Below, piece by piece: positions 17,360-54,023 of a DNA stretch of 64,000 nt (positions are counted from its first letter, which is position 1; each line of letters opens with the position of its first letter). The DNA is from Octopus bimaculoides (Eukaryota): NCBI RefSeq assembly GCF_001194135.2, contig NC_069003.1:33407815-33471814 (forward strand). Reading direction: 5' to 3'. The translations under genes and the position numbers were made by a program. Below the pieces are notes generated by a model. The model saw only the letters and a list, made by a program, of their open reading frames with translations. It did not search any database and had not been told where the DNA came from.

Positions 17360-17610
17360 TGAGGTATTAACTGAAGACAGAAAAACTACATTATTTACAA
17401 CAGATGGATTGGTGTCCTCACCTTGTTTGTTGTTATCACAACATTTCGGCTGATGTACTCTCCAGCCTCCATTAGTCAAATAAAGGGTTGGGTTCGGAAT
17501 TCCACCTGATGAAGGCTGGAGAGTACATCAGCCGAAACGTTGAGATAACAAACAGGGTCAGGACACCTATCTGCCCATTGTAAATAATGTACATAATACC
17601 TCATTTTAAA
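17360..17610. repeat. Inverted pair of Penelope-like terminal repeats with hammerhead-ribozyme-like motifs
   Basis: Arms at about 17360-17475 and 17506-17610 are reverse complements. The plus arm has CTGATGA-a-GGCTG(10 nt)CAGCC-GAAACGT. Confidence 0.6.
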
Positions 17611-17899
17611 AATACAGGAAAGAAAAACTATACACGTAGTAGAAATATAAATACATTGTATATTATACAATTTTTGTTGTTTCTATTAAATGCGTTCGTT
17701 CTGGTGAAAAACTTGTTTTTACATTTAGAGATATTTACAAAGTTTGTACACACATCAAAATATATACAACTTAATTTGAACAAATCAACATATATACATC
17801 AACTTGATTTATATATATATATCAACTTAATTTGTACAACTAAGTATACGAAGAATGAACAGATGCAAACGAAAATCACACACATAGAGGAAAACGTCC

Positions 17900-19201
17900 T
17901 TAATTGTCGTTATATCTGGTGGACGGCATGACACCATAGGCAAGATCAGTCCGTACCTGCCATCGAAGAGAATGTCTCGGTTTTTGTGAGGGTATCACAT
18001 AATTATTGGGCACGAAAGTTTTCCGTGGACGGCTTCCAATGACGTCGTGTTTGGCAATTTTCTCTTTAATGCTCCACCGAAGGGCGTTGTGATTATTTTC
18101 ACCGGGAGGCTTGTGCATGTTCCAGTAGTTCTGAAATTCGTGGAACCTGCTCACGGGGTCTGTCTTTCTGTTTTTCTTCAGCCTCGGCGGTGTTGGAGTA
18201 ACTATAATTGAGGACCTGAACCGGCTATCACAAGAACTTTGGGATCTCTGACAGAATTGGCCGTCTCTGTTTGTTATCTCTCTCAGACGATTCTGGTACT
18301 CAGCAGGGTCAACGATACTGCTACAGCAACTGCCACAGATACTACTTGTGGTACTGATACTACACACAGACTCACTTTTGTCGATATAACGTTTACCATC
18401 GGGGCCTTTGCGGGAGACCTTCCTCTTGGTAACATGAGTGTTTAGCAGTGGAGGTTTTCCGGTGTCGATTTGTGATGGTTTGGGGACGGATTCTTGTGAT
18501 GAGAGGGAGGAGGAAGATGACGAAGGTGCAATATGACGAGTCCAAACGTTTTCTTTGTTCTTGGGTTTATCAAAACTATTTACCTGGTTTGGCTGCGGAA
18601 CGTTTGTTCTGGCGAAAGTTCGAAGGAGATTCTCCTGTTTTTCATGTTCCGTTTCCGATCGATTAGTCAGTGGCTGTTGAGTGTGTGTGTATTGATGGCT
18701 AAGTGTCATTTCCGAGTGACCATCCACCTTATTGGCACTGTTGAACAATTGGGAACTTTCAGCTGTGTTCTGGGGCCGATTGTGAGAAACGGTAACAGAC
18801 GACGGGTCCATGGAATTAACAGAACGACGATCGCCTGTATGAGGCAGACACGACTTATCGTCAACGTTCTTGGCAGTTCGTGATGTAAACGATGGAGAAG
18901 TTATAGAAATGGGTTCTGGAGGAGACGATGGAGACATTTTCAAACAAGTGTCAGTTATGTTGTTGAAAGAAGACGAAATCGAAGTGGATTTATCAACATT
19001 ACGAAGAGAACTTGAGGTTATTTTTTTCACCAAATTCTTAAGTTCTTTTTGAAATTGACATAAACTACTTTGGTTGATATCTTTGATGCCATACCGAAAG
19101 AGTTCCTTTCTTATTTCTTCTTCTGTAAAATCCAACCGTGACTTACTGACATCGGAAGCCATATTTGTGTTATGATTAGTGACGCCCTCTACAGGTGCCA
19201 T
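17900..19201 (-). CDS. HYLS1: Hydrolethalus syndrome 1 (centriolar/ciliogenesis protein), single coding exon, 433 aa
   Basis: N-terminal LDFTEEEIRKEL...L..FQKEL..L motif and C-terminal HYLS1_C-type motif KTDPVSRFHEFQNYW...PGENNHNALRWSIKE...PNNYVIPSQKPRHSLRWQVRTDLA. Acceptor cccctgtag| at 19224-19225 upstream of the ATG. Confidence 0.92.
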   Translation of the reverse strand: MAPVEGVTNHNTNMASDVSKSRLDFTEEEIRKELFRYGIKDINQSSLCQFQKELKNLVKKITSSSLRNVDKSTSISSSFNNITDTCLKMSPSSPPEPISITSPSFTSRTAKNVDDKSCLPHTGDRRSVNSMDPSSVTVSHNRPQNTAESSQLFNSANKVDGHSEMTLSHQYTHTQQPLTNRSETEHEKQENLLRTFARTNVPQPNQVNSFDKPKNKENVWTRHIAPSSSSSSLSSQESVPKPSQIDTGKPPLLNTHVTKRKVSRKGPDGKRYIDKSESVCSISTTSSICGSCCSSIVDPAEYQNRLREITNRDGQFCQRSQSSCDSRFRSSIIVTPTPPRLKKNRKTDPVSRFHEFQNYWNMHKPPGENNHNALRWSIKEKIAKHDVIGSRPRKTFVPNNYVIPSQKPRHSLRWQVRTDLAYGVMPSTRYNDN

Positions 19202-20349
19202 CGAGAAAATAATTCCTGAGCAACTACAGGGGAGATAACTATAACCATATTTATTTTTTTTCTTTGATGAATGAGTTGCAGGATTGTTCAGTTGGGCTGT
19301 GAGCTTGCAGAACCGTTAGTGTGTCGAACAAAATGCTTAGTAGCATGTCTTCCGACTTTACGTTCTGAGTTTTAATTCCGCAAAGGGATCTAGTCGGTTT
19401 GGCTGCCAGCATTTCAATAATAAAGGTTTACCGAAAGTTTTAAAATTTGGCACAATAATCTGGTAATTTTGTTTTATGTAAATAAATGCTTGTGTTAATT
19501 TATCCAAAAAATCTTATTTAGCTGTTATTTTTAGCACACAACATAACCACCTCAATGCCCAATGACAAAAAGAAATGAACAAACAAACATTCAGGCATTC
19601 AATATGTAATTAATGCAAATGCGATAAACAACACGTTATATGCGATAAGCACATTACAATTTTTGACAGAATGGTTTGGAAGAATTAGATGAAAGGTCTC
19701 CGGTACTAAAGTGCTTGTTTCACTTTTTCCAGAAAAATGTTTTTGAAAAGTTATAGAGGTTTAAAAGTTTCATAATTTTCACCCAATCCGGAAACAAGAT
19801 TTGGAAATTGTCCTTTTGTGCGTGGCAGCACGTCTTGTCAACAGTAAACAAAGCAAATAAATTGGGGTTGGGGTATTGAAATTAATAAAAAAATTAAAAA
19901 ATTCCTACATCGTAATCTCCGATATCGAATACAGGATTCTGAAAAAATAAATAAAAAATTACGGAGATGTACTTGCATAGCAAGTGACCTGATCTGAGAT
20001 GGTGTGCTGGAACGAAAACAATTGCAGCGTGGAAGGTGTTTATAAGTCAATTAAAATAACACACAAAAACCGTTAGATTCACTTCAACATTTAAATTTAA
20101 TTTGTCAAAATATTTTCGTCGCTTTGAGACCGCGACCTGATCACTGACAAAATTCTGTGCTTGGTTCAAAAGTTATAGGGGGTACTCTTCTTGAATAGTA
20201 CCGTTATAGGATGGGGTGTGTGGGGATTCCGAAGAAATACCGTTTTCTGTCTACAAAAAAGTGATTTAGAATGAATATATCTTAAATGTTGTGTGAGAAA
20301 AGAAATATATTCGGCAATTATAAGAGGGAGATAACTAGTCCACAACTTG

Positions 20350-20690
20350 TGGTTACCCGTTACCATCAACACCGCCGATTTCCAGTGGGTTTTGGTGGAA
20401 GTCAAACGTCACGTACTTCGCGGCACAAATTACACCAATCTACGACTGTAGTCCACTCATGCACAGTATCTTATCGCAACATATCGCGTAATCATAAACG
20501 ACCAAAACGATAGACCCACATTTCCCCATCTATAGCGTCACCACGTGTAGTGAGGCCACATGGTGAATTACAATTTTCGCAAGTGTACAACCACTGAAGA
20601 ATATTGTCTCTTGATTCGACTAATTGAGTGGTATTCTAAGATTCCTCCAAGATTGATTCCCGTTTGAGGACATATTTCAGTGTAAGTAAA
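20350..20690. promoter_or_regulatory. CpG-rich candidate bidirectional promoter (HYLS1 leftward, unknown transcript rightward)
   Basis: High CpG density. Minus-strand donor TGATG|gtaacg at about 20359-20364, plus-strand donor TTCAGT|gtaagt at 20682-20687, and an E-box CACGTG near 20543. Confidence 0.5.
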
Positions 20691-20741
20691 GAATGAGAAT
20701 CTAGTTGTCTCCCTCTTAATTTTTATTTACTTTTCTTATCC

Positions 20742-20960
20742 ATGAATTTTTTTGAGGATGACCAAAAAACTATTGGATTCTGCCAGAATCGTGGTGTTCT
20801 GCCAACTACTGTGATATATCCACAATGTCGGGGTGAATGCGTGTATAGAAAGGACCAACATTTCTGGCGATCTAGAAGGAGTTATACTGTCGCTAAATCT
20901 AAAAAAACTGCAGCAGTGTTGGTTTTTCTGTATCGGACTTTCAAGGTTCTTGTCTTCATA
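20742..20960 (+). pseudogene. Decayed N-terminal fragment of a second Merlin-like transposase
   Basis: IGFCQNRGVLPTTVIYPQC...HFWRS...KK(frameshift)CS resembles the Merlin N-terminal I.F.Q..GLLP....CP.C....WRC...K.C motif, with Cys codons apparently mutated. It is cut off by an RTE tail. Confidence 0.5.
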
Positions 20961-20969
20961 ATACACACA

Positions 20970-21930
20970 TTCATCATCATCATCATCATCATTGTCGTTT
21001 GACGTCCGTTTTCCATGCTGGCATGGGTTGGACGGTTTGACTGAGGACTGGCAAGCCAGAAGGCTGCACCAGGCTCCAATCAGATCTGGCAATGTTTCTA
21101 CAGCTAGATGCCCTTTCTAACGCCAACCGCTCCGAGAGTAGTGGGTACTTTTTGCGTGCCACCGGCACAGAAGCCAGTCATGTGGCCCTGGCATCGATCA
21201 CGTGCTTTTTACGTACTACCGGCACGGGAGCCAGTCAAGAGGCACTGGCATCGACCACGTTCGGATGGTGCATTTTACATGCCACCGGCACTGGAGCCAG
21301 TCGGGGGGGGGGGGCACTGGCCACAGCTACGATTTTGGTTTTACTTGACTTAACAGGTCTTCTCAAGCATATCATATCGCCCGACGTATCAAAGGCCGGA
21401 CATGCAACACTAGCATCGACCATGTCTGCGATCTCACTTTAGTTGCCAGGTCTCCTCAATCACAGCATATCTCCAAAGGCCTTGGTCTCCTGCCATTGCC
21501 TCAATGAAGCCCAGCGTTCGAAGGTCGTGCTTCACCACTTCATCCCATGTTTTCCTGGGTCTACCTCTTCTACAGGTTCCTTCCACAGTTAGGGTGTGGC
21601 ACTTCTTCACACAGTTCTCATCCACACGGAGCTCATGCCCATACCAGCGTAGTCGTCTCCCTTGCACACCACATCTGATGCTTCTTATGTCCAACTTTTC
21701 TCTCAGGGCACTCACACTCTGTCATGTATCCACACTGACATTACACATCCAGCAGAGGTAGGAGCNNNNNNNNNNCACTCTGTCATGTATCCACACTGAC
21801 ATTACACATCCAGCAGAGGTAGGAGCTCTCTGAACTTTGCCCAGGCTATTCTTATTCTAGCTGCTACACTTTCAGAGCATCCACCCCCACTACAGACTTG
21901 GTCATCTAGATAGCAGAAGCTATCAGCTAC
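20970..21930 (-). mobile_element. 5'-truncated RTE LINE
   Basis: RT C-terminal motifs DSFCYL.DQ..SGGGCSESV.ARIR.AWAKFRE and RRLRWYGH...VEGTCRRGRPRKTWDEVVKHDL, then a repeat-containing 3' UTR and (GAT)n tail. It contains a 10-N gap. Confidence 0.88.
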
Positions 21931-22707
21931 TTCAAGTTTTTTTCCCCTGGCATGTGATGGAATCTATTTTCTGTACACACAAAAATTACCTTCCTGATTA
22001 ACCTTCCTTTGATATTGCTGCACCTTTTATGTGTCCATAGCTTACACCGGGTGCATCATATGGAGTTTCTACCTCCGCCTTTTCTACAGATTGAATAGGG
22101 ACATCTACCTGAAAGGTTTGGTGATTGGTGAACCTTTTATAATTCATACTGAAGTTTTACCTAGAGTGTGTATGCTAAAGAAGTTATTTGCGTATACCTT
22201 TCTTAATTCCAAAGGAAGAAAATCTTGCGGTGGACTCCAGCCATGGTTGCTAAGCCCCAAACAACTCTGCGTATATCTGTTGTATTGAATGCACAAGGGA
22301 AACATTTATGAAAATGTATACATAAAGAAGTTATGTTTGCAATTAGCTATATAATTGATAGCAAAATTTATATAAATATAAAATAAAATTAGATCCAGGT
22401 TTAGTCACAGGTTGATCAAGTTTGTAAAGTTTTAAACAGTTTTGCAACAACATAGTGTCTCGATACATTTTAATGAAAATGTGATAGAAAGAAATAATAC
22501 CACTCTCTTTGGAAGAGAAATTCATTTTTGGTGGTGGTGAGGGAAGCATTTGTTTTATTATCACAATTTCCACAGCTTTCACCTGTAATCAATTCTTTTG
22601 CTAATCTTTTGACTGTTTGGACTTTTTTCCTAATTTTTAAACTTTGATTTTGTTTCTTTGACTATTAGAACTTTCTTTCCTAATTTTTTTAGAATTTGAT
22701 TTTCAAG

Positions 22708-23595
22708 ATGGATTGTCCAAGATATGAAATGGCCCAAAATTTATCAGAGAAGAATTTCATACAATATCTGAAAGACAATAGAATCATTTCGAATCAGAAG
22801 ACATGTAGTTGTGGAAAGGAAATGAGCATAAGGCCTTCTCAGCGTGCCATAGATGGGGTGGTATGGAGGTGCCACAAGTGCAAGAATGCAGTGTCAATCC
22901 GTACCAACACTTTCTTGGAGAAGAGTAAGCTTTCTGTGTACAAAATTTTCAATCTTATTTTCGATTTTATTTTTGAAATGCCGGTAACCAGTTCCATGTC
23001 AGCAACCAATGTCAGTAAAGTCACAGCAATACAGTGGTACGAGTATTGCCGTGAAATCTGTTCGCAGAAATTATTAAAAGATAAAAAAAAATTAGGTGGC
23101 CCGAATCATGTTGTAGAAATAGACGAAGGTTTAATGTTTCGGAGAAAAAACGAAGCCGGGCGTGTGGTGCATTCATACTGGGTCGTTGGTTTCTATGACA
23201 ACACCCAGAAAAAAGGATACCTGCAACATGTTGGAGATAGAAAAGCAGAGACACTGGAGGCACTCATTATAGACAACGTAGAACCAGGGTCTATAGTGTT
23301 TACAGACCAGTGGGCTAGTTACCGGAAGCTAGAAAGCCTAGGCTACATCCATGGGACTGTGGACCTCACTCAGAATTTTGGGGACCCAGAGAGTGGTGTA
23401 GGTGGAAATCAAGTGGAGGCGTACTGGAACCGAATTAAGAGAAGGCTGAAATACAAATTCACGTCAAGTGGAGACATGCGATGGTCGCACGTCAATGAGG
23501 CCATGTACAGAGAACTTTATAATATGACGTACGACCGTGCATGGGAGAATTACAAGACCTTCCTAAAACACGTGGCAGAAATTTATCCACAATGA
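22708..23595 (+). CDS. Merlin / IS1595 (ISXO2-like) DDE transposase, intact ORF of 295 aa
   Basis: Zn-ribbon C-S-C...WRCHKC, SIRTNTF, GGPNHVVEIDE, WVVG, PGSIVFTDQWASY, H.TV...NF.DP, N.VE.YW and E..YR motifs of the DDE_Tnp_IS1595 family. No stops or frameshifts. First ATG at 22708 (the ORF track starts at TTG 22696). Confidence 0.9.
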   Translation: MDCPRYEMAQNLSEKNFIQYLKDNRIISNQKTCSCGKEMSIRPSQRAIDGVVWRCHKCKNAVSIRTNTFLEKSKLSVYKIFNLIFDFIFEMPVTSSMSATNVSKVTAIQWYEYCREICSQKLLKDKKKLGGPNHVVEIDEGLMFRRKNEAGRVVHSYWVVGFYDNTQKKGYLQHVGDRKAETLEALIIDNVEPGSIVFTDQWASYRKLESLGYIHGTVDLTQNFGDPESGVGGNQVEAYWNRIKRRLKYKFTSSGDMRWSHVNEAMYRELYNMTYDRAWENYKTFLKHVAEIYPQ

Positions 23596-24234
23596 TTTTC
23601 GAAAGGTATGTAAATGATAATTCTTATAACATATTTCTGTGTACTTTTTCGGGCATACCTACACAAGTGTGACTCCTTCAATTTTCTTTCATCACAACTA
23701 TCTGAAAAATGGAAAATGATGGAATATGCATTGTACACCCCAATCACAAAAATTTCATTAAAAGACATCCATTTTTCAGCATCGACTTTGTTTCTTCATA
23801 ACTTCCAGAAAAATGGATACTTTTTAAAAAAATTTTTTCCTTTTTTTTTTCCACCCCTCCCTCACCATCCTACTCCAGACCGGTTTTGGCCTTTTTTTTT
23901 TTTTTTTTTGCACTTCAAAACCATAGCAGAAGCCTTTTTGGTAAAAAATATTTTTAAAATTGTTAATATTTTCAGAGGAAAAAGTGAGTGATTTAAGGGA
24001 GATTTGGCTGTTGTTTCTAGCACATCCTATGACAACCCTCCTCGTTTCTTTCTCACTCACGAATATGATGTTTTTCAATATTTTTCTCTCCATAAATACA
24101 TTTATATGCTATGAAAAAAAATTTGAAAAATTGTAATTCTTTTGGCAACCTCACTCCTTGCTCCTCGTTGTTTCTGATTATAATTTAAAATATTGGAGAG
24201 CCTGAGAAGGTCATTGCTAGCAGAAAAGATGAAT

Positions 24235-24460
24235 GTCGCTGGCAGAAACATTAGCACGCCGGGCGAAATGCTTAGCGATATTTCATCTGCCGCTACGTTC
24301 TGAGTTCGAATTCCGCCGAGGTCGACTTTGCCTTTCATCCTTTCGGGGTCGATTAAATAAGTACCAGTTACGCACTGGGGTCGATATAAACGACTTAATC
24401 CGTTTGTCTGTCCTTGTTTGTCCCCTCTGTATGTAGCCCCTTGTGGGCAATAAAGAAATA
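24235..24460 (+). mobile_element. tRNA-derived SINE (family B)
   Basis: ggcagaaacattagcacgccgggcgaaatgcttagcg...ctgagttcgaattccgccgaggtcgactttgcctttcatcctttcggggtcga. Copies lie near 1385-1540, 13770-13980, 30810-31025, 33010-33225, 54090-54290, 54360-54505, 56410-56860, 60770-61110 and 62350-62900. Confidence 0.85.
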
Positions 24461-25403
24461 AAAAAAAGAAATAAGAAAGGATGAATGTAAATGATAATGC
24501 ATTTTAATAGCATACTTTTCTGTTAGAAGTATTTTTTCTTACACACATACACAGCTTCTCTTGATTGAGGTGGGGGTGAAAATAAAGTCAGGTGGGGGGC
24601 TACTTGTGAAGGTATGCCATTTTTTCATGATAAATAAGTCTAATACGTTTTTTCCTTAATTTTGCAGGCTATGTCTTCCGCTCCACTTGAGTGCTTCCAG
24701 TGTTTTCTGCCTTTCTATCGACACCAAAATTAATTTCTCTTCCAAAGAGAGAGTGGCGTTATCCCTTTCTATCACATTTTCATTAGAATGTATCAAGACA
24801 CTATGTTGTCTGTCACAAAACAGTTAAAACTTTTACTATCTTGATTGATCTGTGACTAAACCTGGATTTAATATGATTTCATACAAACTTTGCTATCAGT
24901 TATATAGATAACGAGCAGTAATGCCCGTTGTTGATCGGGTAATTACTTTTACTCTTTCTCAGGAGCCATATTCAAAGTGTTATTATATATGTAGATTTAC
25001 TCCTCCTGTATGTGTATGTTTTATAAGAAAAAACATGTAATAATTGAAGTCACACGAACTTCTGTTTGTTTATTATATGATGCTAATAAATGAGTTGTAT
25101 GTGTTATTTTATATATCAATACATGTAATGGTAATTATATAATACACAAGGCTTTGATCAACATGGAGCTGTAAATAAAAGAGAATTGCCTAACGTGCCG
25201 CACAGTAGGACTGAACCCAAGGTGACATGATTGGAAAACAAGCTTCTAAACCACACAGCCACACCTATAAAGGAGAGATACATTTTGGATAATATACTCT
25301 TTGATACAATATGCTTAACAAAAAGATGAGATGTTTACGGCAAGAAGACCTTTGATTTTACTATTAACTCGACCAACGCAACAACTAACAATGTTACACC
25401 ATG

Positions 25404-26004
25404 CAGGGTGTTCTAGAATTAACTATCTGTTTCAATGAAATTGAGAAAATTTTTAAAAACTGACAGAATTCTATGTTTATCACCAAAACAAATAGATTTA
25501 TAAATCTTACGTCAAACTTTTATTGAAAATTTTCAACATGTGTGTATCCCTGCATACTTCAAATCTCTCCTTAGCATTGTGAAACACATTTTGAAGCATT
25601 TCAGGAGTTAGCTCCTGCATTGCTAACTGAATGTGTTCTTTAAACTCAGCCAAATGATTGCTCCATCTTTGGGATGGAGGTAAAAGAAAAAAATGATAGC
25701 TGCCAAATTGAAAAAAAGCTGTTGTGGACAAATAAGAGGGGTCCAACAGGAATGAAAATAAAATTATTAAAAAATTATAAAGATTATAAAATTATTAACA
25801 AAATTTAAAATTTATNNNNNNNNNNNNNNNNNNNNNNNNNNNNNNNNNNNNNNNNNNNNNNNNNNNNNNNNNNNNNNNNNNNNNNNNNNNNNNNNNNNNN
25901 NNNNNNNNNNNNNNNNCTTTTAAACATGATAAACATAAATACAAGTGAGTTTTAAAAAATGCGTCTGATTTCTCTCAAATCATGATTAATTCTGGGACAC
26001 CCTG
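25404..26004 (-). mobile_element. Tc1/mariner-superfamily element remnant with both TIRs
   Basis: TIRs CAGGGTGTTCTAGAATTAA / TTAATTCTGGGACACCCTG. ORF 25507-25746 carries LAEFKEHIQLAMQELTPEMLQNVFHNAKERFEVC, typical of the transposase C-terminus. It contains an N gap. Confidence 0.75.
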
Positions 26005-27754
26005 TGTTTATTCGTCTGACTAAACGGGGGGGGGGGGAACACAGGGAAGGGGACTAATTGCAGGTGGCGAGCATAGCTTCCAGAAGTGGCACGTGGTCAA
26101 ACTCAAATGGCTGAGTCACAACAGCAGACATGCTAACGGGCTATGCTGTGTTGCGCGGGATTGGAAATGTGAAACATCAACAAGGTACTTCTGGAGAATG
26201 GATGAATGGGTTTGTTGTGCCTTTACCCAGCTGCACACACATGTACATGGCTTGGTAGTGTGCGGGATGGCAACATGAAACATCAACAGGGTGCTGACAA
26301 AAATTTTAATGCTCTTTTCATTCCCTCTGCCACATTGGACAAAAAGGTTTTCATGAAATATTATACAGTACTTATAATGCATAAGTAGTGTCAATATTTT
26401 ATTGTCGGAAAATGGCCTAAAAAGTTATGGGCCAAAATGCTTTAAAAATGCATTTTATCTGCCCCTGGGCCTGCATTAGGCAAGAAGTTGAAAATATTTT
26501 GACCCATGACACTCCATGGGCCCTATCTAATGCATGTGTAAAATATGAATGAAATCGGTTGAGTACTTCTCAAGTTTTAGGGATTCACACAGACAGACAG
26601 ACACACATTTTCAGTTTTATATATATTGATTGCAAACATAACTTTTTTATGTATACACCATCTGAACATGATCGTTGCCAAGACACTGACTGGCCCCCGT
26701 GCACTAACACTAGTTGTCAAGCAGTGGTTGGCAACTGAGACACACACACTTAGATGGACATATATCCGTTGTCCATGCTGGCATGTGTTGAACAGTGTGA
26801 CCAGAGCTGGCCAGTGGGGAGCTGCACCGGACTCCAGTCTGATTTGGCATGGTTTCTATGGCTAGATACCCTTCCTAATGCCAACCACTTTGCAGAGTGT
26901 GGCTGGGTGCTTTTTTGTGGCACCACATAGGAGCTTTTACATGGCACTGTCACAAATATTTTATACCATTAGAGGGACTGGTTTTAACATTTCTGCTGTG
27001 GAATATGGGACTTCTTGAGTACAGCAAGGTGCCAGGCATCTGGGATGCCTATTTTCCTTTCTGTGGCACCAGCAGTAGTGAAGATCACTATCATCCAGCC
27101 ATCTTGTTCTTGGTCTTATCCTATGTCTCTTACTGATTGGCTTGGCTTGTGATTCTTTCCTCCAACTTTCTGATCTCTGAGTTACATACCATTGAGTAAA
27201 TATCACTCCAGAGACCCTTCAGATGAACTCCATTTCAGCCATCTGTATTTGCTATTGTATCCTTGTGGTTGTTACTCAACATAAATATTAGTTAATGACA
27301 TGTGGCATAACAAAATAATAATGAAAAAAAAAATTAATTAAGCAGTACATATGTCATTTTTAATGAATTGTAAGATTCTACCACAATGTATATATATATA
27401 AAAGAGGGATTAGGTTTTCTGCAGGCGAAACTCAACTTACAAGAGCAGTAAATGTGTTGTGTTGTTAGGCAAGGTACACATGTTTTAAAGCTAGATGTTT
27501 AACATAGAAAGGCCATCCTAAATACACATGGGTTACAGCTGGGATTAATAAAATAGGCTTACATATTGAAATATAACACAGAGAATGAATAAAGTTTAAT
27601 ATCATATCTCTTTATCTCTCTGTATATATATATATATATAATTTTTATGTAAATGAACGAATAACACAAAGACAAAAAGCTAATAAAACATCGCAAAAGA
27701 CACTAAATACAGTAATAGATTACAATTTAAATCAATTCAACTGCAATTTCGTCA

Positions 27755-52970: not shown

Positions 52971-53595
52971 TGTATGTATGTATTTATTTATTTATGCATG
53001 TATGTATGTATGTATGTGTGTATGTCTGGTTGTTTGTATATATATATATATATATTTTTAATATATATATGTATATGTGTGTGTGTGTGAGTGCGTGTAC
53101 ATACGTATGTAAAAATGGATGTATGTGTGTGTATGTGTATCTGTTTATTTATGAATAAATGAATGAATACTTTTATCACACAACATAATCTGCCACTGGA
53201 AAGTTACTGTATCTGCAGTACATACATACATACATACATACATATATGCGCATGCAGTGAGTGTATGTGTGTGTGTAAACATACATATATATATATGCAT
53301 GCATATATATATATATATGTATGTATGTATGTACTTACAAATACAAAATACCTTCTGTGATATGAACCAGAACGTTGTCAAACAGAGCATATCCTTAATC
53401 ACATGATAAAAGTAACAACGGAAAAGAAATTACAGAATACAATTTAACAATTTCAGACATAGGAAAAATTAGGACCAAGATAAATAAAATTCTGTATCCA
53501 ACAAGATTAATTATTAAACTCGTCAAGTTTTCTAAAATCTCTAATGTTTGTTCGTTAATGCAGGTGTCTTCCATAAACGAGATTTAAAAGGAGAG

Positions 53596-54010
53596 ATGGC
53601 AGGTGCATGGACCAGCTATTTGTTATGTCTGGTATTGCTAGCGTGTTTGTTGTGTCGGCCTCCTTGTGTGTGGACCACTCAGATGGAAGGTACTGGCTTC
53701 TACACCGACAATGGCCTGGAACAGTCCGTGATGGTCAGCCGGATCCCACATCGTGTGAAGAAGGAATTTCAACAAGAAATACTCACCTTGATGGGGTTAC
53801 ACCACAAACCGAAACCGCGAGCTCCTGGTAAGGAGACTTCTGCTCCCCGCTTCATGATCGATCTGTACAATAAGCTGCATGGTTCAGGGGCCAGTGGGTC
53901 CATTGAAGATGATGATGAGGATGAACATCCCCACTTCTTCAGCAGAACTTTAGAAAATGAAATGCCTAAACTCAACAGTTCTGATGTTATCATGAGTTTT
54001 GTCAACCATG
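53596..54010 (+). CDS. BMP5-8: BMP5/6/7/8 (gbb/60A) subfamily ligand, first coding exon (signal peptide and prodomain start)
   Basis: Hydrophobic signal peptide, FYTDNGLEQSV, KEFQQEILTLMGLHHKPKP, SAPRFMIDLYN and SDVIMSFVNH; donor CAT G|gtgagt at the phase-1 position conserved in BMP5/6/7; acceptor aatgcag| at 53563. No further exons found in the window. Confidence 0.9.
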
Positions 54011-54023
54011 GTGAGTAATTTAC

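What the first reader, a model, noticed from the sequence alone, without database searches (positions are those of the whole stretch)
22620..23595. Intact Merlin/IS1595 transposase that looks like a domesticated, spliced host gene
Seen: this is the only uninterrupted transposase ORF in a window where every other TE-coding relic has stops or frameshifts. A branch-point-like CTAAT, a long T tract and ttttcaAG sit directly before the ATG at 22708. The D-D-E residues (VEIDE, FTDQ, NQVE) are kept, but two normally conserved His-containing motifs are replaced: VNHS becomes VDLT, and HTN/HTQ becomes GGN. VEIDES is VEIDEG. I found no short GG-ended TIRs with a TSD around the ORF. Established: Merlin elements are the eukaryotic relatives of IS1016/IS1595, with TIRs and 8-9 bp TSDs. 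Inference: this could be an immobilised transposase co-opted as a host DNA-binding or nuclease gene; I know of no described cephalopod example.
Basis: partly seen in the sequence, partly recalled or inferred. Interest (0 to 1): 0.75.

Follow-up and report, generated by a model that had tools for sequence, protein, structure and literature searches.

The report
Domesticated Merlin transposase gene in octopus
An old "jumping gene" enzyme that landed between the HYLS1 and PRDM15 genes of Octopus has stopped jumping. It has been kept intact, spliced and expressed as an ordinary single-copy host gene in at least two, probably three, octopus species, so the animal seems to have put it to use.

Summary
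The window is Octopus bimaculoides chromosome CM046623.1. The ORF at 22708-23595 encodes a 295-aa Merlin/IS1595 DDE transposase.

- **Copy number:** it is single-copy and present in all four DNA samples checked.
- **Transcript:** it sits wholly inside the middle exon of a three-exon GT..AG-spliced transcript, with exons at about 20364-20681, 22693-23605 and 24668 to at least 25123. Four RNA runs from four studies show it.
- **Orthologue:** O. sinensis has one (LOC118767687) at the same site, with HYLS1 on one side and PRDM15-upstream DNA on the other. All four splice sites are conserved.
- **Selection:** dN/dS is 0.18. None of 20,000 neutral simulations gave as few amino-acid changes. The CDS has one in-frame indel, against 14 indels in 1.5 kb of flanks.
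- **Active site:** the D-D-E triad is kept, but the normally near-invariant VNHS..FV / HTN motif is decayed. O. sinensis has deleted seven of its residues in frame.
- **Age:** Argonauta lacks the gene at the syntenic site, so the co-option is specific to the octopus lineage.

The acceptor in use is the AG at 22691-92, not the one at 22706-07. Degenerate 190-bp inverted arms do flank the ORF. A GG..CC-ended Merlin-type MITE lies inside intron 2.

Function is unknown. A DNA-binding role is more likely than transposition.

The parts
20364..20681 (+). Exon 1. Non-coding 5' UTR with two short uORFs and an in-frame stop before the main ATG. The donor GTAAGT starts at 20682.
   Evidence: RNA contigs begin at 20364-20373 and join 20681 to 22693 (GT..AG) in X17, X19 and X20, plus 2 raw reads in X24. 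The block and its donor are conserved in O. sinensis.
20682..22692 (+). Intron 1 (2011 nt). It is filled with very high-copy SINE/LINE-like repeats (20910-22129) and holds the left inverted arm.
   Evidence: Joint. DNA depth is about 1,000 to nearly 60,000.
22343..22533 (.). Left arm of a degenerate long inverted repeat. It is probably the eroded (sub)terminal repeat of the ancestral Merlin element.
   Evidence: Its inner part is also found upstream of the paralogue's ORF. It is present in O. sinensis.
22693..23605 (+). Exon 2. It carries the whole coding sequence. The acceptor AG is at 22691-92 and the donor GTATGT starts at 23606.
   Evidence: The three letters AGG fit either side of the junction, which puts the donor GT at 23606. 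Both sites are conserved in O. sinensis and in L001.
22708..23595 (+). CDS of the 295-aa Merlin/IS1595-type transposase-derived protein. It has an N-terminal CxC...CxxC zinc ribbon, a helical region and an RNase H-like DDE core.
23122..23124 (+). Codon for D139, the first catalytic Asp (VEIDEG).
23305..23307 (+). Codon for D200, the second catalytic Asp (FTDQ).
23416..23418 (+). Codon for E237, the catalytic Glu (NQVE).
23359..23406 (+). Decayed motif III, V218 to G233 (VDLTQNFGDPESGVGG, where the family consensus is VNHSxNFVDPxTGxHT). It contains the T221A polymorphism at 23368. Seven of these codons are deleted in frame in O. sinensis.
23606..24667 (+). Intron 2 (1062 nt, GT..AG). It starts 10 nt after the stop codon.
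   Evidence: RNA contigs run from exon 2 straight into 24668 in X17, X19 and X20. The acceptor TTTTGCAG is conserved in O. sinensis.
23651..24618 (.). Nested Merlin-type non-autonomous element inside intron 2. Its TIRs are GGCATACCTACACAAGTG (23652-23669) and TACTTGTGAAGGTATGCC (24601-24618). They are flanked by ACTTTTTC (23643-23650) and ATTTTTTC (24619-24626). The element itself carries later SINE-like insertions.
   Evidence: (0.04 matches expected by chance). The same TIR occurs elsewhere in O. vulgaris (L010 8120).
24668..25123 (+). Exon 3 (3' UTR). The contigs of X19 and X20 end at 25094-25123, just after AATAAA at 25088. Thinner RNA coverage continues to about 25450-25610, so the 3' end is not fixed.
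24722..24911 (.). Right arm of the degenerate long inverted repeat. It lies inside exon 3.

Best explanation
This is a domesticated (exapted) Merlin-superfamily transposase gene of Octopus.

**How it arose.** A Merlin element inserted between HYLS1 and PRDM15. This happened after the octopus lineage split from Argonauta and before O. bimaculoides and O. sinensis diverged. Its inverted ends decayed and it is now single-copy and immobile. The 295-codon ORF has since been held open by purifying selection acting on the host.

**How it is expressed.** It is transcribed from a start about 2.3 kb upstream, outside the element. The mRNA has three exons. The whole CDS lies in exon 2, and an intron begins 10 nt after the stop codon.

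**Likely mechanism (inferred, not shown).** The protein keeps its zinc ribbon and helical DNA-binding half, which is the most constrained part, and its RNase H-like fold. It most likely works as a sequence-specific DNA-binding protein, for example a regulator or repressor that recognises Merlin-end-like sites. It is unlikely to work as a transposase. The near-invariant His/Thr motif next to the catalytic Glu has decayed in every orthologue and is partly deleted in O. sinensis.

**My estimates.** Host-selected domesticated gene: about 0.85. DNA-binding role without transposition: about 0.5. Residual nuclease activity cannot be excluded, because the D-D-E triad is intact.
For: **Identity and locus**
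- The window is O. bimaculoides GCA_001194135.2, CM046623.1, with HYLS1 and a PRDM gene as neighbours.

**Immobile and single-copy**
- DNA read depth over the ORF is 0-5, against up to nearly 60,000 for nearby repeats.
- The same 1668-nt contig appears at single-copy depth in four samples from three studies, with one SNP.
- The inverted arms are only about 81% identical. No 7-9-bp TSD or GG termini were found at their outer ends.

**Orthology**
- The O. sinensis LOC118767687 locus is colinear with the window. The alignment runs from HYLS1 (17469-19499) through exon 1, the same intronic repeats, the arms and the ORF, to PRDM15-upstream unique DNA (27089-27232).
- The third species' contig L001 is colinear over 1.8 kb.

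**Selection**
- NG86 dN/dS is 0.176 (bimaculoides vs sinensis, p = 5e-9), 0.183 (bimaculoides vs L001) and 0.151 (sinensis vs L001).
- The nonsynonymous rate is 0.41 times the flanking non-coding rate (p = 5e-5). The CDS has one in-frame indel, against 14 indel events in 1485 nt of flanks.
- Simulation with the flank mutation spectrum expects 34.1 +/- 3.1 changed codons against 21 observed, and 53.5 against 34 for L001. In both cases 0 of 20,000 simulations reached the observed value. P(no stop) is 0.078 and 0.019.

**Expression**
- The GT..AG joints 20681>22693 and 23605>24668 appear in contigs of three RNA runs, and raw reads of a fourth show the first.
- All four splice sites are conserved in O. 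sinensis.

**Fold and constraint**
- The AlphaFold model has pLDDT 89.4. Foldseek matches it to integrase and ISCth4 RNase H cores.
- Pooled omega is 0.08 for residues 71-130 and 0.11 for 241-295, against 0.23-0.24 elsewhere.
Against: - No protein-level or functional evidence exists. Transcript depth is low, at k-mer depth 9-13 against 25-110 for HYLS1.
- NG86 dS (0.18) exceeds flank divergence (0.075), so 0.18 probably understates omega. Measured against the flanks, the constraint is about 0.4.
- Exon 1 partly overlaps a low-copy repeat, so the promoter may itself derive from a TE. Chimeric TE transcripts are common.
- Only two, or three, closely related species carry the gene. It was not found within 10 kb of HYLS1 or PRDM15 in the O. 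vulgaris assembly, where the region is rearranged.
- The intact D-D-E triad means that loss of catalysis is only inferred.
- O. bimaculoides has many other Merlin ORFs (191 hits, PMC8101967), including an intact 295-aa paralogue.
Confidence: 0.8

Rival explanations
1. It is still an autonomous, low-copy Merlin transposon. The ORF is intact because selection acts on transposition competence, and the spliced transcript is the element's own or an incidental one.
For: The D-D-E triad is intact. Inverted arms flank the ORF. Merlin is abundant in this genome (PMC8101967). An intact 295-aa paralogue exists on another chromosome.
Against: - The same insertion sits at the same site in O. sinensis, with dS 0.18 and omega 0.18. 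Selection has therefore acted on a fixed, orthologous copy.
- The arms are only about 81% identical and have no TSD.
- No other copy at 80% identity or better covers the full ORF.
- The family's near-invariant motif is decayed, and partly deleted in O. sinensis.
- Transcription starts outside the element.
Confidence: 0.04
2. It is a neutral relic that remains open by chance. Transcription is noise from a nearby, TE-derived promoter with cryptic splice sites.
For: Expression is low. Exon 1 overlaps a low-copy repeat. The window is full of transcribed repeats.
Against: - 0 of 20,000 neutral simulations give as few amino-acid changes, in two independent comparisons. P(no stop) is 0.078 and 0.019.
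- The CDS has one in-frame indel, against 14 indel events in the flanks.
- All four splice sites are conserved across species.
Confidence: 0.04
3. It is a domesticated gene that is still an active nuclease or recombinase. It would use the intact D-D-E triad to cut or rearrange DNA at Merlin-derived sites, for example the dispersed GGCATACC-ended MITEs.
For: D139, D200 and E237 are kept in all three orthologues. The RNase H core is modelled confidently. A MITE family with Merlin-type ends exists in the genome, including one inside this gene's own intron.
Against: - The His (129 of 143 family members) and Thr (131 of 143) next to the catalytic Glu are replaced. Seven residues of that loop are deleted in O. 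sinensis, and the site is polymorphic.
- With 88-93% overall identity, keeping three residues is not in itself significant.
- The paralogue has lost D139 yet stays open.
Confidence: 0.12

Closest known systems
Merlin superfamily DNA transposons / bacterial IS1595 (IS1016) family transposases
   Same: The protein is homologous over its full length (PF12762; NCBIfam IS1595). It has the typical length of about 295-320 aa, the D-D-E triad, an RNase H-like core and an N-terminal Cys-rich region.
   Different: It is not mobile. It is single-copy and fixed at an orthologous site in two species. Its inverted arms are degenerate, with no GG ends or 8-9-bp TSD. The VNHS/HTN motif is decayed. It is expressed from an external exon by splicing.
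Merlin-derived (DDE_Tnp_IS1595) host genes proposed in ciliates, dinoflagellates and Perkinsela (PMC8101967; Oxytricha PMC3558436; Blepharisma PMC9942806)
   Same: These are preserved Merlin transposase ORFs without usable TIRs or TSDs, sometimes syntenic between species and sometimes with altered DDE residues. They are interpreted as domestication events.
   Different: Those cases are in protists. This one is in an animal, and it has direct evidence from synteny, dN/dS and spliced RNA. There is no link to programmed genome editing here.
SETMAR (Hsmar1 mariner-derived) and HARBI1 (PIF/Harbinger-derived) in vertebrates
   Same: Each is a single-copy transposase-derived gene under purifying selection, with the DNA-binding domain conserved and catalytic residues partly or wholly kept. 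Each has a possible pool of genomic binding sites in related MITE ends.
   Different: They come from different superfamilies. There is no fusion to a host domain here (SETMAR has a SET domain), because exon 1 is non-coding. This gene is much younger and restricted to Octopus. Its function is untested.
O. bimaculoides paralogue LOC106875185 (P0002, chromosome CM046604.1, next to COMMD1)
   Same: It is 295 aa with the same termini and 65% identity. It shares part of the upstream arm and about 110 nt after the stop codon.
   Different: It is at a different locus. Its first catalytic Asp is lost (VEVKKC), but it keeps the His of VDHS. dS against the window gene is saturated at about 2.

Membership tests
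Merlin / IS1595 transposase (protein family) | Significant match to the DDE_Tnp_IS1595 catalytic domain above curated cut-offs | tested here: met
   Pfam PF12762 scores 51.5 bits against a cutoff of 27. NCBIfam NF033547 scores 78.2 bits against 75. The protein library holds 7675 relatives at E up to 0.001.
Merlin / IS1595 transposase (protein family) | D-D-E catalytic triad in an RNase H-like fold | tested here: met
   D139, D200 and E237 align to the family's triad. The model has pLDDT 89.4 and matches integrase and ISCth4 cores.
Merlin / IS1595 transposase (protein family) | Conserved block III (VNHS..FVDP..G.HTN.IE) around the catalytic Glu | tested here: not met
   The window has VDLT..FGDP..GVGGNQVE. 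L220 replaces His (129 of 143), G233 replaces Thr (131 of 143) and D219 replaces Asn (117 of 143). O. sinensis has deleted seven residues here.
Merlin transposon (mobile element) | TIRs of 24-462 bp with terminal 5'-GG and 8-9-bp TSDs enclosing the ORF (PMC8101967) | tested here: not met
   The enclosing arms, 22343-22533 and 24722-24911, are about 81% identical and have no GG ends. No 7-9-bp direct repeat lies at their outer ends. The GG..CC pair with a TSD, at 23651-24618, does not contain the ORF.
Merlin transposon (mobile element) | Multiple dispersed, similar copies (evidence of transposition) | tested here: not met
   ORF depth is 0-5 at 80% likeness or better, against about 1,000 to nearly 60,000 for neighbouring repeats. 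A single-copy contig is present in four samples. Only short 85% fragments occur elsewhere.
Domesticated (exapted) transposase gene | Orthologues at the same genomic position in different species | tested here: met
   O. sinensis L014 is colinear from HYLS1 to PRDM15-upstream DNA. The gene is absent from the syntenic 16-kb interval of Argonauta hians. O. vulgaris is undetermined.
Domesticated (exapted) transposase gene | Purifying selection on the coding sequence after immobilisation | tested here: met
   Omega is 0.15-0.18. 0 of 20,000 neutral simulations reached the observed value.
Domesticated (exapted) transposase gene | Expression as a host-type mRNA | tested here: met
   A three-exon GT..AG transcript is seen in four RNA runs from four studies. 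The splice sites are conserved.
Domesticated (exapted) transposase gene | Protein made and a host function or phenotype | not testable with these tools
   No proteomic, ribosome-profiling or genetic data were available.

The most novel reading that the evidence does not exclude
The octopus host uses a catalytically competent Merlin-derived nuclease or recombinase, with its D-D-E triad intact. It acts on the hundreds of Merlin-type MITE ends (GGCATACC...) scattered through the genome. That would be a programmed or somatic DNA-cutting or rearrangement system in a cephalopod, analogous to RAG or PiggyMac but built from a superfamily never before seen domesticated in animals.
Probability: 0.06. 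Interest if true: 0.9.

Novelty: new member of a known kind. Interest (0 to 1): 0.58.

Why it matters
Transposase domestication is a recognised route to new genes. The known animal cases come from other superfamilies, such as mariner, piggyBac, hAT, P, Harbinger and Transib. In the literature I could search, Merlin-derived host genes are proposed only for protists. This locus is a clean, young animal example, with synteny, selection and splicing evidence.

It lies in a lineage known for TE-rich genomes and unusual genome reorganisation. Because it is young, the intermediate stages of domestication are still visible:

- decaying terminal repeats;
- a promoter and first exon captured from outside the element;
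- introns around the CDS;
- a catalytic-site motif that is relaxing and partly deleted while the DNA-binding half is tightly held.

It also supplies a concrete candidate protein for testing whether dispersed Merlin MITEs act as a binding-site network in octopus.

Tried and rejected
1. **L001-L004 as proof of orthology.** These are 1.5-1.75-kb Logan contigs, 85-91% identical to the window. They are colinear but too short to reach unique flanks, so alone they could not separate host-level from TE-level selection. The O. sinensis locus settled this. The species of L001 is unknown.
2. **O. vulgaris synteny.** The 10-kb flanks of HYLS1 (L010) and PRDM15 (L012) hold no Merlin ORF. In that assembly the two genes are about 95 kb apart in the same orientation. 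By analogy with O. sinensis, the gene would lie beyond the fetched flank. The result is inconclusive and does not show absence.
4. **TSD search.** No 7-9-bp direct repeat was found at the outer ends of the long arms.
5. **N-terminal fusion to a host exon.** Rejected, because an in-frame stop lies upstream of the ATG in the spliced mRNA.
6. **The arms as halves of an unrelated high-copy MITE.** Rejected. Their depth is low-copy, and the left arm's inner part also lies upstream of the paralogue's ORF.
7. **A mistake of my own.** My first O. sinensis dN/dS used a mis-registered CDS and is void. One search is the corrected codon alignment.
8. **A failed call.** One read-laying run failed on a filter at 23937-23972.
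Full report
**1. What is there**

The window is Octopus bimaculoides GCA_001194135.2, chromosome CM046623.1, near 33.42 Mb. A gene is called there for exactly this product. The ORF at 22708-23595 (+) is uninterrupted and encodes 295 aa.

- It matches Pfam DDE_Tnp_IS1595 (51.5 bits, cutoff 27) and NCBIfam IS1595 transposase (78.2 bits, cutoff 75).
- An exhaustive HMMER scan finds 7675 cluster representatives at E up to 0.001. Most are 290-320 aa, so the ORF is a full-length Merlin-type transposase.
- An AlphaFold model from a 23-sequence alignment is confident (pLDDT 89.4, pTM 0.85). It shows an N-terminal beta zinc ribbon, a helical region and an alpha/beta core.
- Foldseek matches that core to retroviral integrase catalytic cores and the ISCth4 transposase.

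**2.

I aligned the protein with 143 family representatives. D139 (VEIDEG), D200 (FTDQ) and E237 (NQVE) occupy the triad columns. Residues that are usually conserved are replaced, as follows:

| Window residue | Usual residue | Family members with the usual residue |
|---|---|---|
| L220 | His | 129 of 143 |
| D219 | Asn | 117 of 143 |
| T221 | Ser | 107 of 143 |
| G225 | Val | 105 of 143 |
| G232 | His | 80 of 143 |
| G233 | Thr | 131 of 143 |
| G141 | Ser | 93 of 143 |

None of the window's other ORFs of at least 140 aa has a transposase domain.

**3.

Contigs from three RNA runs (X17, X19, X20; three studies) join 20681 to 22693 across a GT..AG intron of 2011 nt. Raw reads of a fourth run (X24) show the same joint.

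- The acceptor in use is tttttttAG at 22691-92. The ttttcaAG directly before the ATG is exonic.
- Exon 1 starts at about 20364-20373. It is non-coding: the spliced mRNA has an in-frame stop upstream of the ATG and two short uORFs.
- The same contigs leave exon 2 at 23605 (AAAG|GTATGT), 10 nt after the stop codon, and resume at 24668 after TTTTGCAG.
- Exon 3 runs to at least 25094-25123, just past an AATAAA at 25088. Thinner coverage continues to about 25450-25610.
- Transcript depth is modest, at k-mer depth 9-13 against 25-110 for HYLS1.

**4. It is immobile and single-copy**

I laid raw genomic reads (three runs, about 0.7x each) at 80% likeness or better. Depth over the ORF is 0-5. Depth over the SINE/LINE-like repeats at 20910-22129 is about 1,000 to nearly 60,000. 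Four further DNA samples from three studies all contain the same 1668-nt contig (22142-23809) at single-copy depth. Its only variant is 23368 A>G, which gives T221A inside the decayed motif.

**5. Remains of the element**

The ORF is enclosed by degenerate inverted arms at 22343-22533 and 24722-24911. They are about 81% identical and most similar at their inner ends. Their outer ends show no 5'-GG termini and no 7-9-bp target-site duplication. Those are the defining ends of Merlin elements (PMC8101967).

Part of the left arm also lies upstream of the 65%-identical paralogue LOC106875185 on another chromosome. The arms therefore belonged to the ancestral element.

Separately, an 18-nt GG..CC inverted pair lies inside intron 2, at 23652-23669 and 24601-24618. 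Two matches were found where 0.04 are expected by chance. The pair is flanked by ACTTTTTC and ATTTTTTC. This has the signature of a nested Merlin-type MITE. The same end occurs at an unrelated place in O. vulgaris.

**6. Orthology**

The 90%-identity cluster of this protein contains O. sinensis LOC118767687 (XP_036368558/9). Its locus (L014) is colinear with the window across the following blocks:

- HYLS1 (window 17469-19499, 87% identity);
- the exon-1 block (20203-20957);
- the same intronic repeats (21008-22136);
- the left arm;
- the ORF with its flanks (22596-23970, 92.5% identity);
- 24474-25287;
- PRDM15-upstream unique DNA at the end of the locus (27089-27232).

All four splice sites are conserved.

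A third, unidentified species is represented by contigs L001-L004. They carry a colinear 295-codon copy with the exon-2 splice sites conserved.

In Argonauta hians, HYLS1 and PRDM15 are also divergent neighbours, 16 kb apart. That interval is fully covered by L011 and L013 and has no Merlin homologue.

In the O. vulgaris assembly the two genes are about 95 kb apart in the same orientation. The 10-kb flanks I could fetch do not contain the gene. By analogy with O. sinensis they would not reach it, so O. vulgaris is undetermined.

**7. Selection**

Pairwise NG86 estimates on a codon alignment are below.

| Pair | dN | dS | omega | p |
|---|---|---|---|---|
| bimaculoides vs sinensis | 0.032 | 0.181 | 0.176 | 5e-9 |
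| bimaculoides vs L001 | 0.054 | 0.296 | 0.183 | 1e-12 |
| sinensis vs L001 | 0.057 | 0.376 | 0.151 | 1.4e-16 |

dS exceeds the flank divergence of 7.5%. I therefore also compared nonsynonymous sites directly with 1485 nt of aligned flanks. They evolve at 0.41 times the flank rate (p = 5e-5). The CDS has one indel, and it is in frame; the flanks have 14.

I then placed the observed number of substitutions at random, using the flank mutation spectrum. This gives 34.1 +/- 3.1 changed codons against 21 observed, and 53.5 +/- 3.8 against 34 for L001. In both cases 0 of 20,000 simulations reached the observed value. The chance of acquiring no stop codon is 0.078 and 0.019.

This selection acts on a fixed orthologous copy, so it is host-level selection.

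**8. What the pattern of constraint suggests**

Pooled over the three pairs, omega is lowest in residues 71-130 (0.08) and 241-295 (0.11). It is 0.23-0.24 in the zinc ribbon, the beta-sheet core and motif III.

Positions 218-225 differ in every orthologue. O. sinensis has removed seven codons there in frame (LTQNFGD), and the site is polymorphic in O. bimaculoides. The paralogue has instead lost D139 (VEVKKC) and still stays open.

My inference is that the retained function does not need the ancestral active-site architecture. A DNA-binding or regulatory role is more likely than transposition. This is not shown. The intact D-D-E triad leaves residual nuclease activity possible.

**9. Comparison with what is known**

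Merlin is known to be abundant in O. bimaculoides, with 191 protein hits (PMC8101967). Domestication of Merlin transposases has been proposed only for ciliates, dinoflagellates and Perkinsela (PMC8101967, PMC3558436, PMC9942806). A survey of TE-derived transcription factors that included O. bimaculoides does not mention Merlin (PMC10027918).

The locus is therefore a new member of a known kind, the domesticated DDE transposase gene. Within the literature I could search, it is the first from this superfamily in an animal.

**10. Caveats**

- There is no evidence at the protein level.
- Expression is low.
- The promoter and exon 1 partly overlap a low-copy repeat.
- The taxonomic sampling is narrow.
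- The mechanism is inferred.
- One search contained a mis-registered alignment and should be ignored in favour.

Noticed in passing
window 23651-24618: A Merlin-type MITE-like element lies inside intron 2. It has GG..CC 18-nt TIRs and a 7/8-matching 8-bp TSD. Its left junction with the ORF's 3' flank is shared with the 65% paralogue and with other genomic copies (X1 contigs at 23587-23770). It may therefore have been nested in the ancestral element before that element spread. Why this flank is far better conserved between paralogues (about 75-80%) than synonymous sites (pS 0.70) is unexplained.
   Followed up: partly
L005 10001-10888 (O. bimaculoides CM046604.1, next to COMMD1): The paralogue LOC106875185 is also an intact 295-aa ORF. 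Its first catalytic Asp and the adjacent Glu are replaced (VEVKKC), but it keeps the His of VDHS. It may be a second, independent domestication. Its expression could not be checked.
   Followed up: partly
L010 / L012 (O. vulgaris OX597836.1, about 28.29 and 28.40 Mb) against window 17900-54000: Gene order differs between assemblies. In O. vulgaris, HYLS1 is flanked by an amine-oxidase gene and a TGF-beta-propeptide gene, and lies about 95 kb from PRDM15 in the same orientation. In O. bimaculoides the order is HYLS1(-), Merlin gene(+), PRDM15(+), TGF-beta-like ORF (53548-54015, +). Argonauta, and O. sinensis as far as its locus reaches, share the divergent HYLS1/PRDM15 arrangement. This suggests an inversion or a misassembly in O. 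vulgaris.
   Followed up: partly
window 20910-22129, 24205-24549, 26735-26964: These are extremely high-copy SINE/LINE-like repeats. DNA depth is about 1,000 to nearly 60,000 at about 0.7x sampling, and they are heavily represented in RNA. An ORF at 21434-21715 (-) lies within the first block, but it had no Pfam match.
   Followed up: no
window 20520-20700 (3' part of exon 1): DNA reads at 80% likeness or better come mostly from other copies. At 20531 T>A and 20552 G>A, nearly all reads carry the other letter, and word depth is 2-17 times single copy. Part of exon 1 and its donor therefore lie in a low-copy repeat, so the captured 5' exon may itself derive from a TE.
   Followed up: no
window 17900-19201 (-): HYLS1 is a single-exon 433-aa ORF. 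It evolves fast, at 76% amino-acid identity to O. vulgaris and 47% to Argonauta. The neighbouring PRDM15-like gene is 92% identical to its O. vulgaris counterpart.
   Followed up: no
window 25816-25916: This is a run of N (an assembly gap of 101 bases). RNA contigs bridge it with only 3 letters (GCA), so the gap is an artefact of scaffolding.
   Followed up: no
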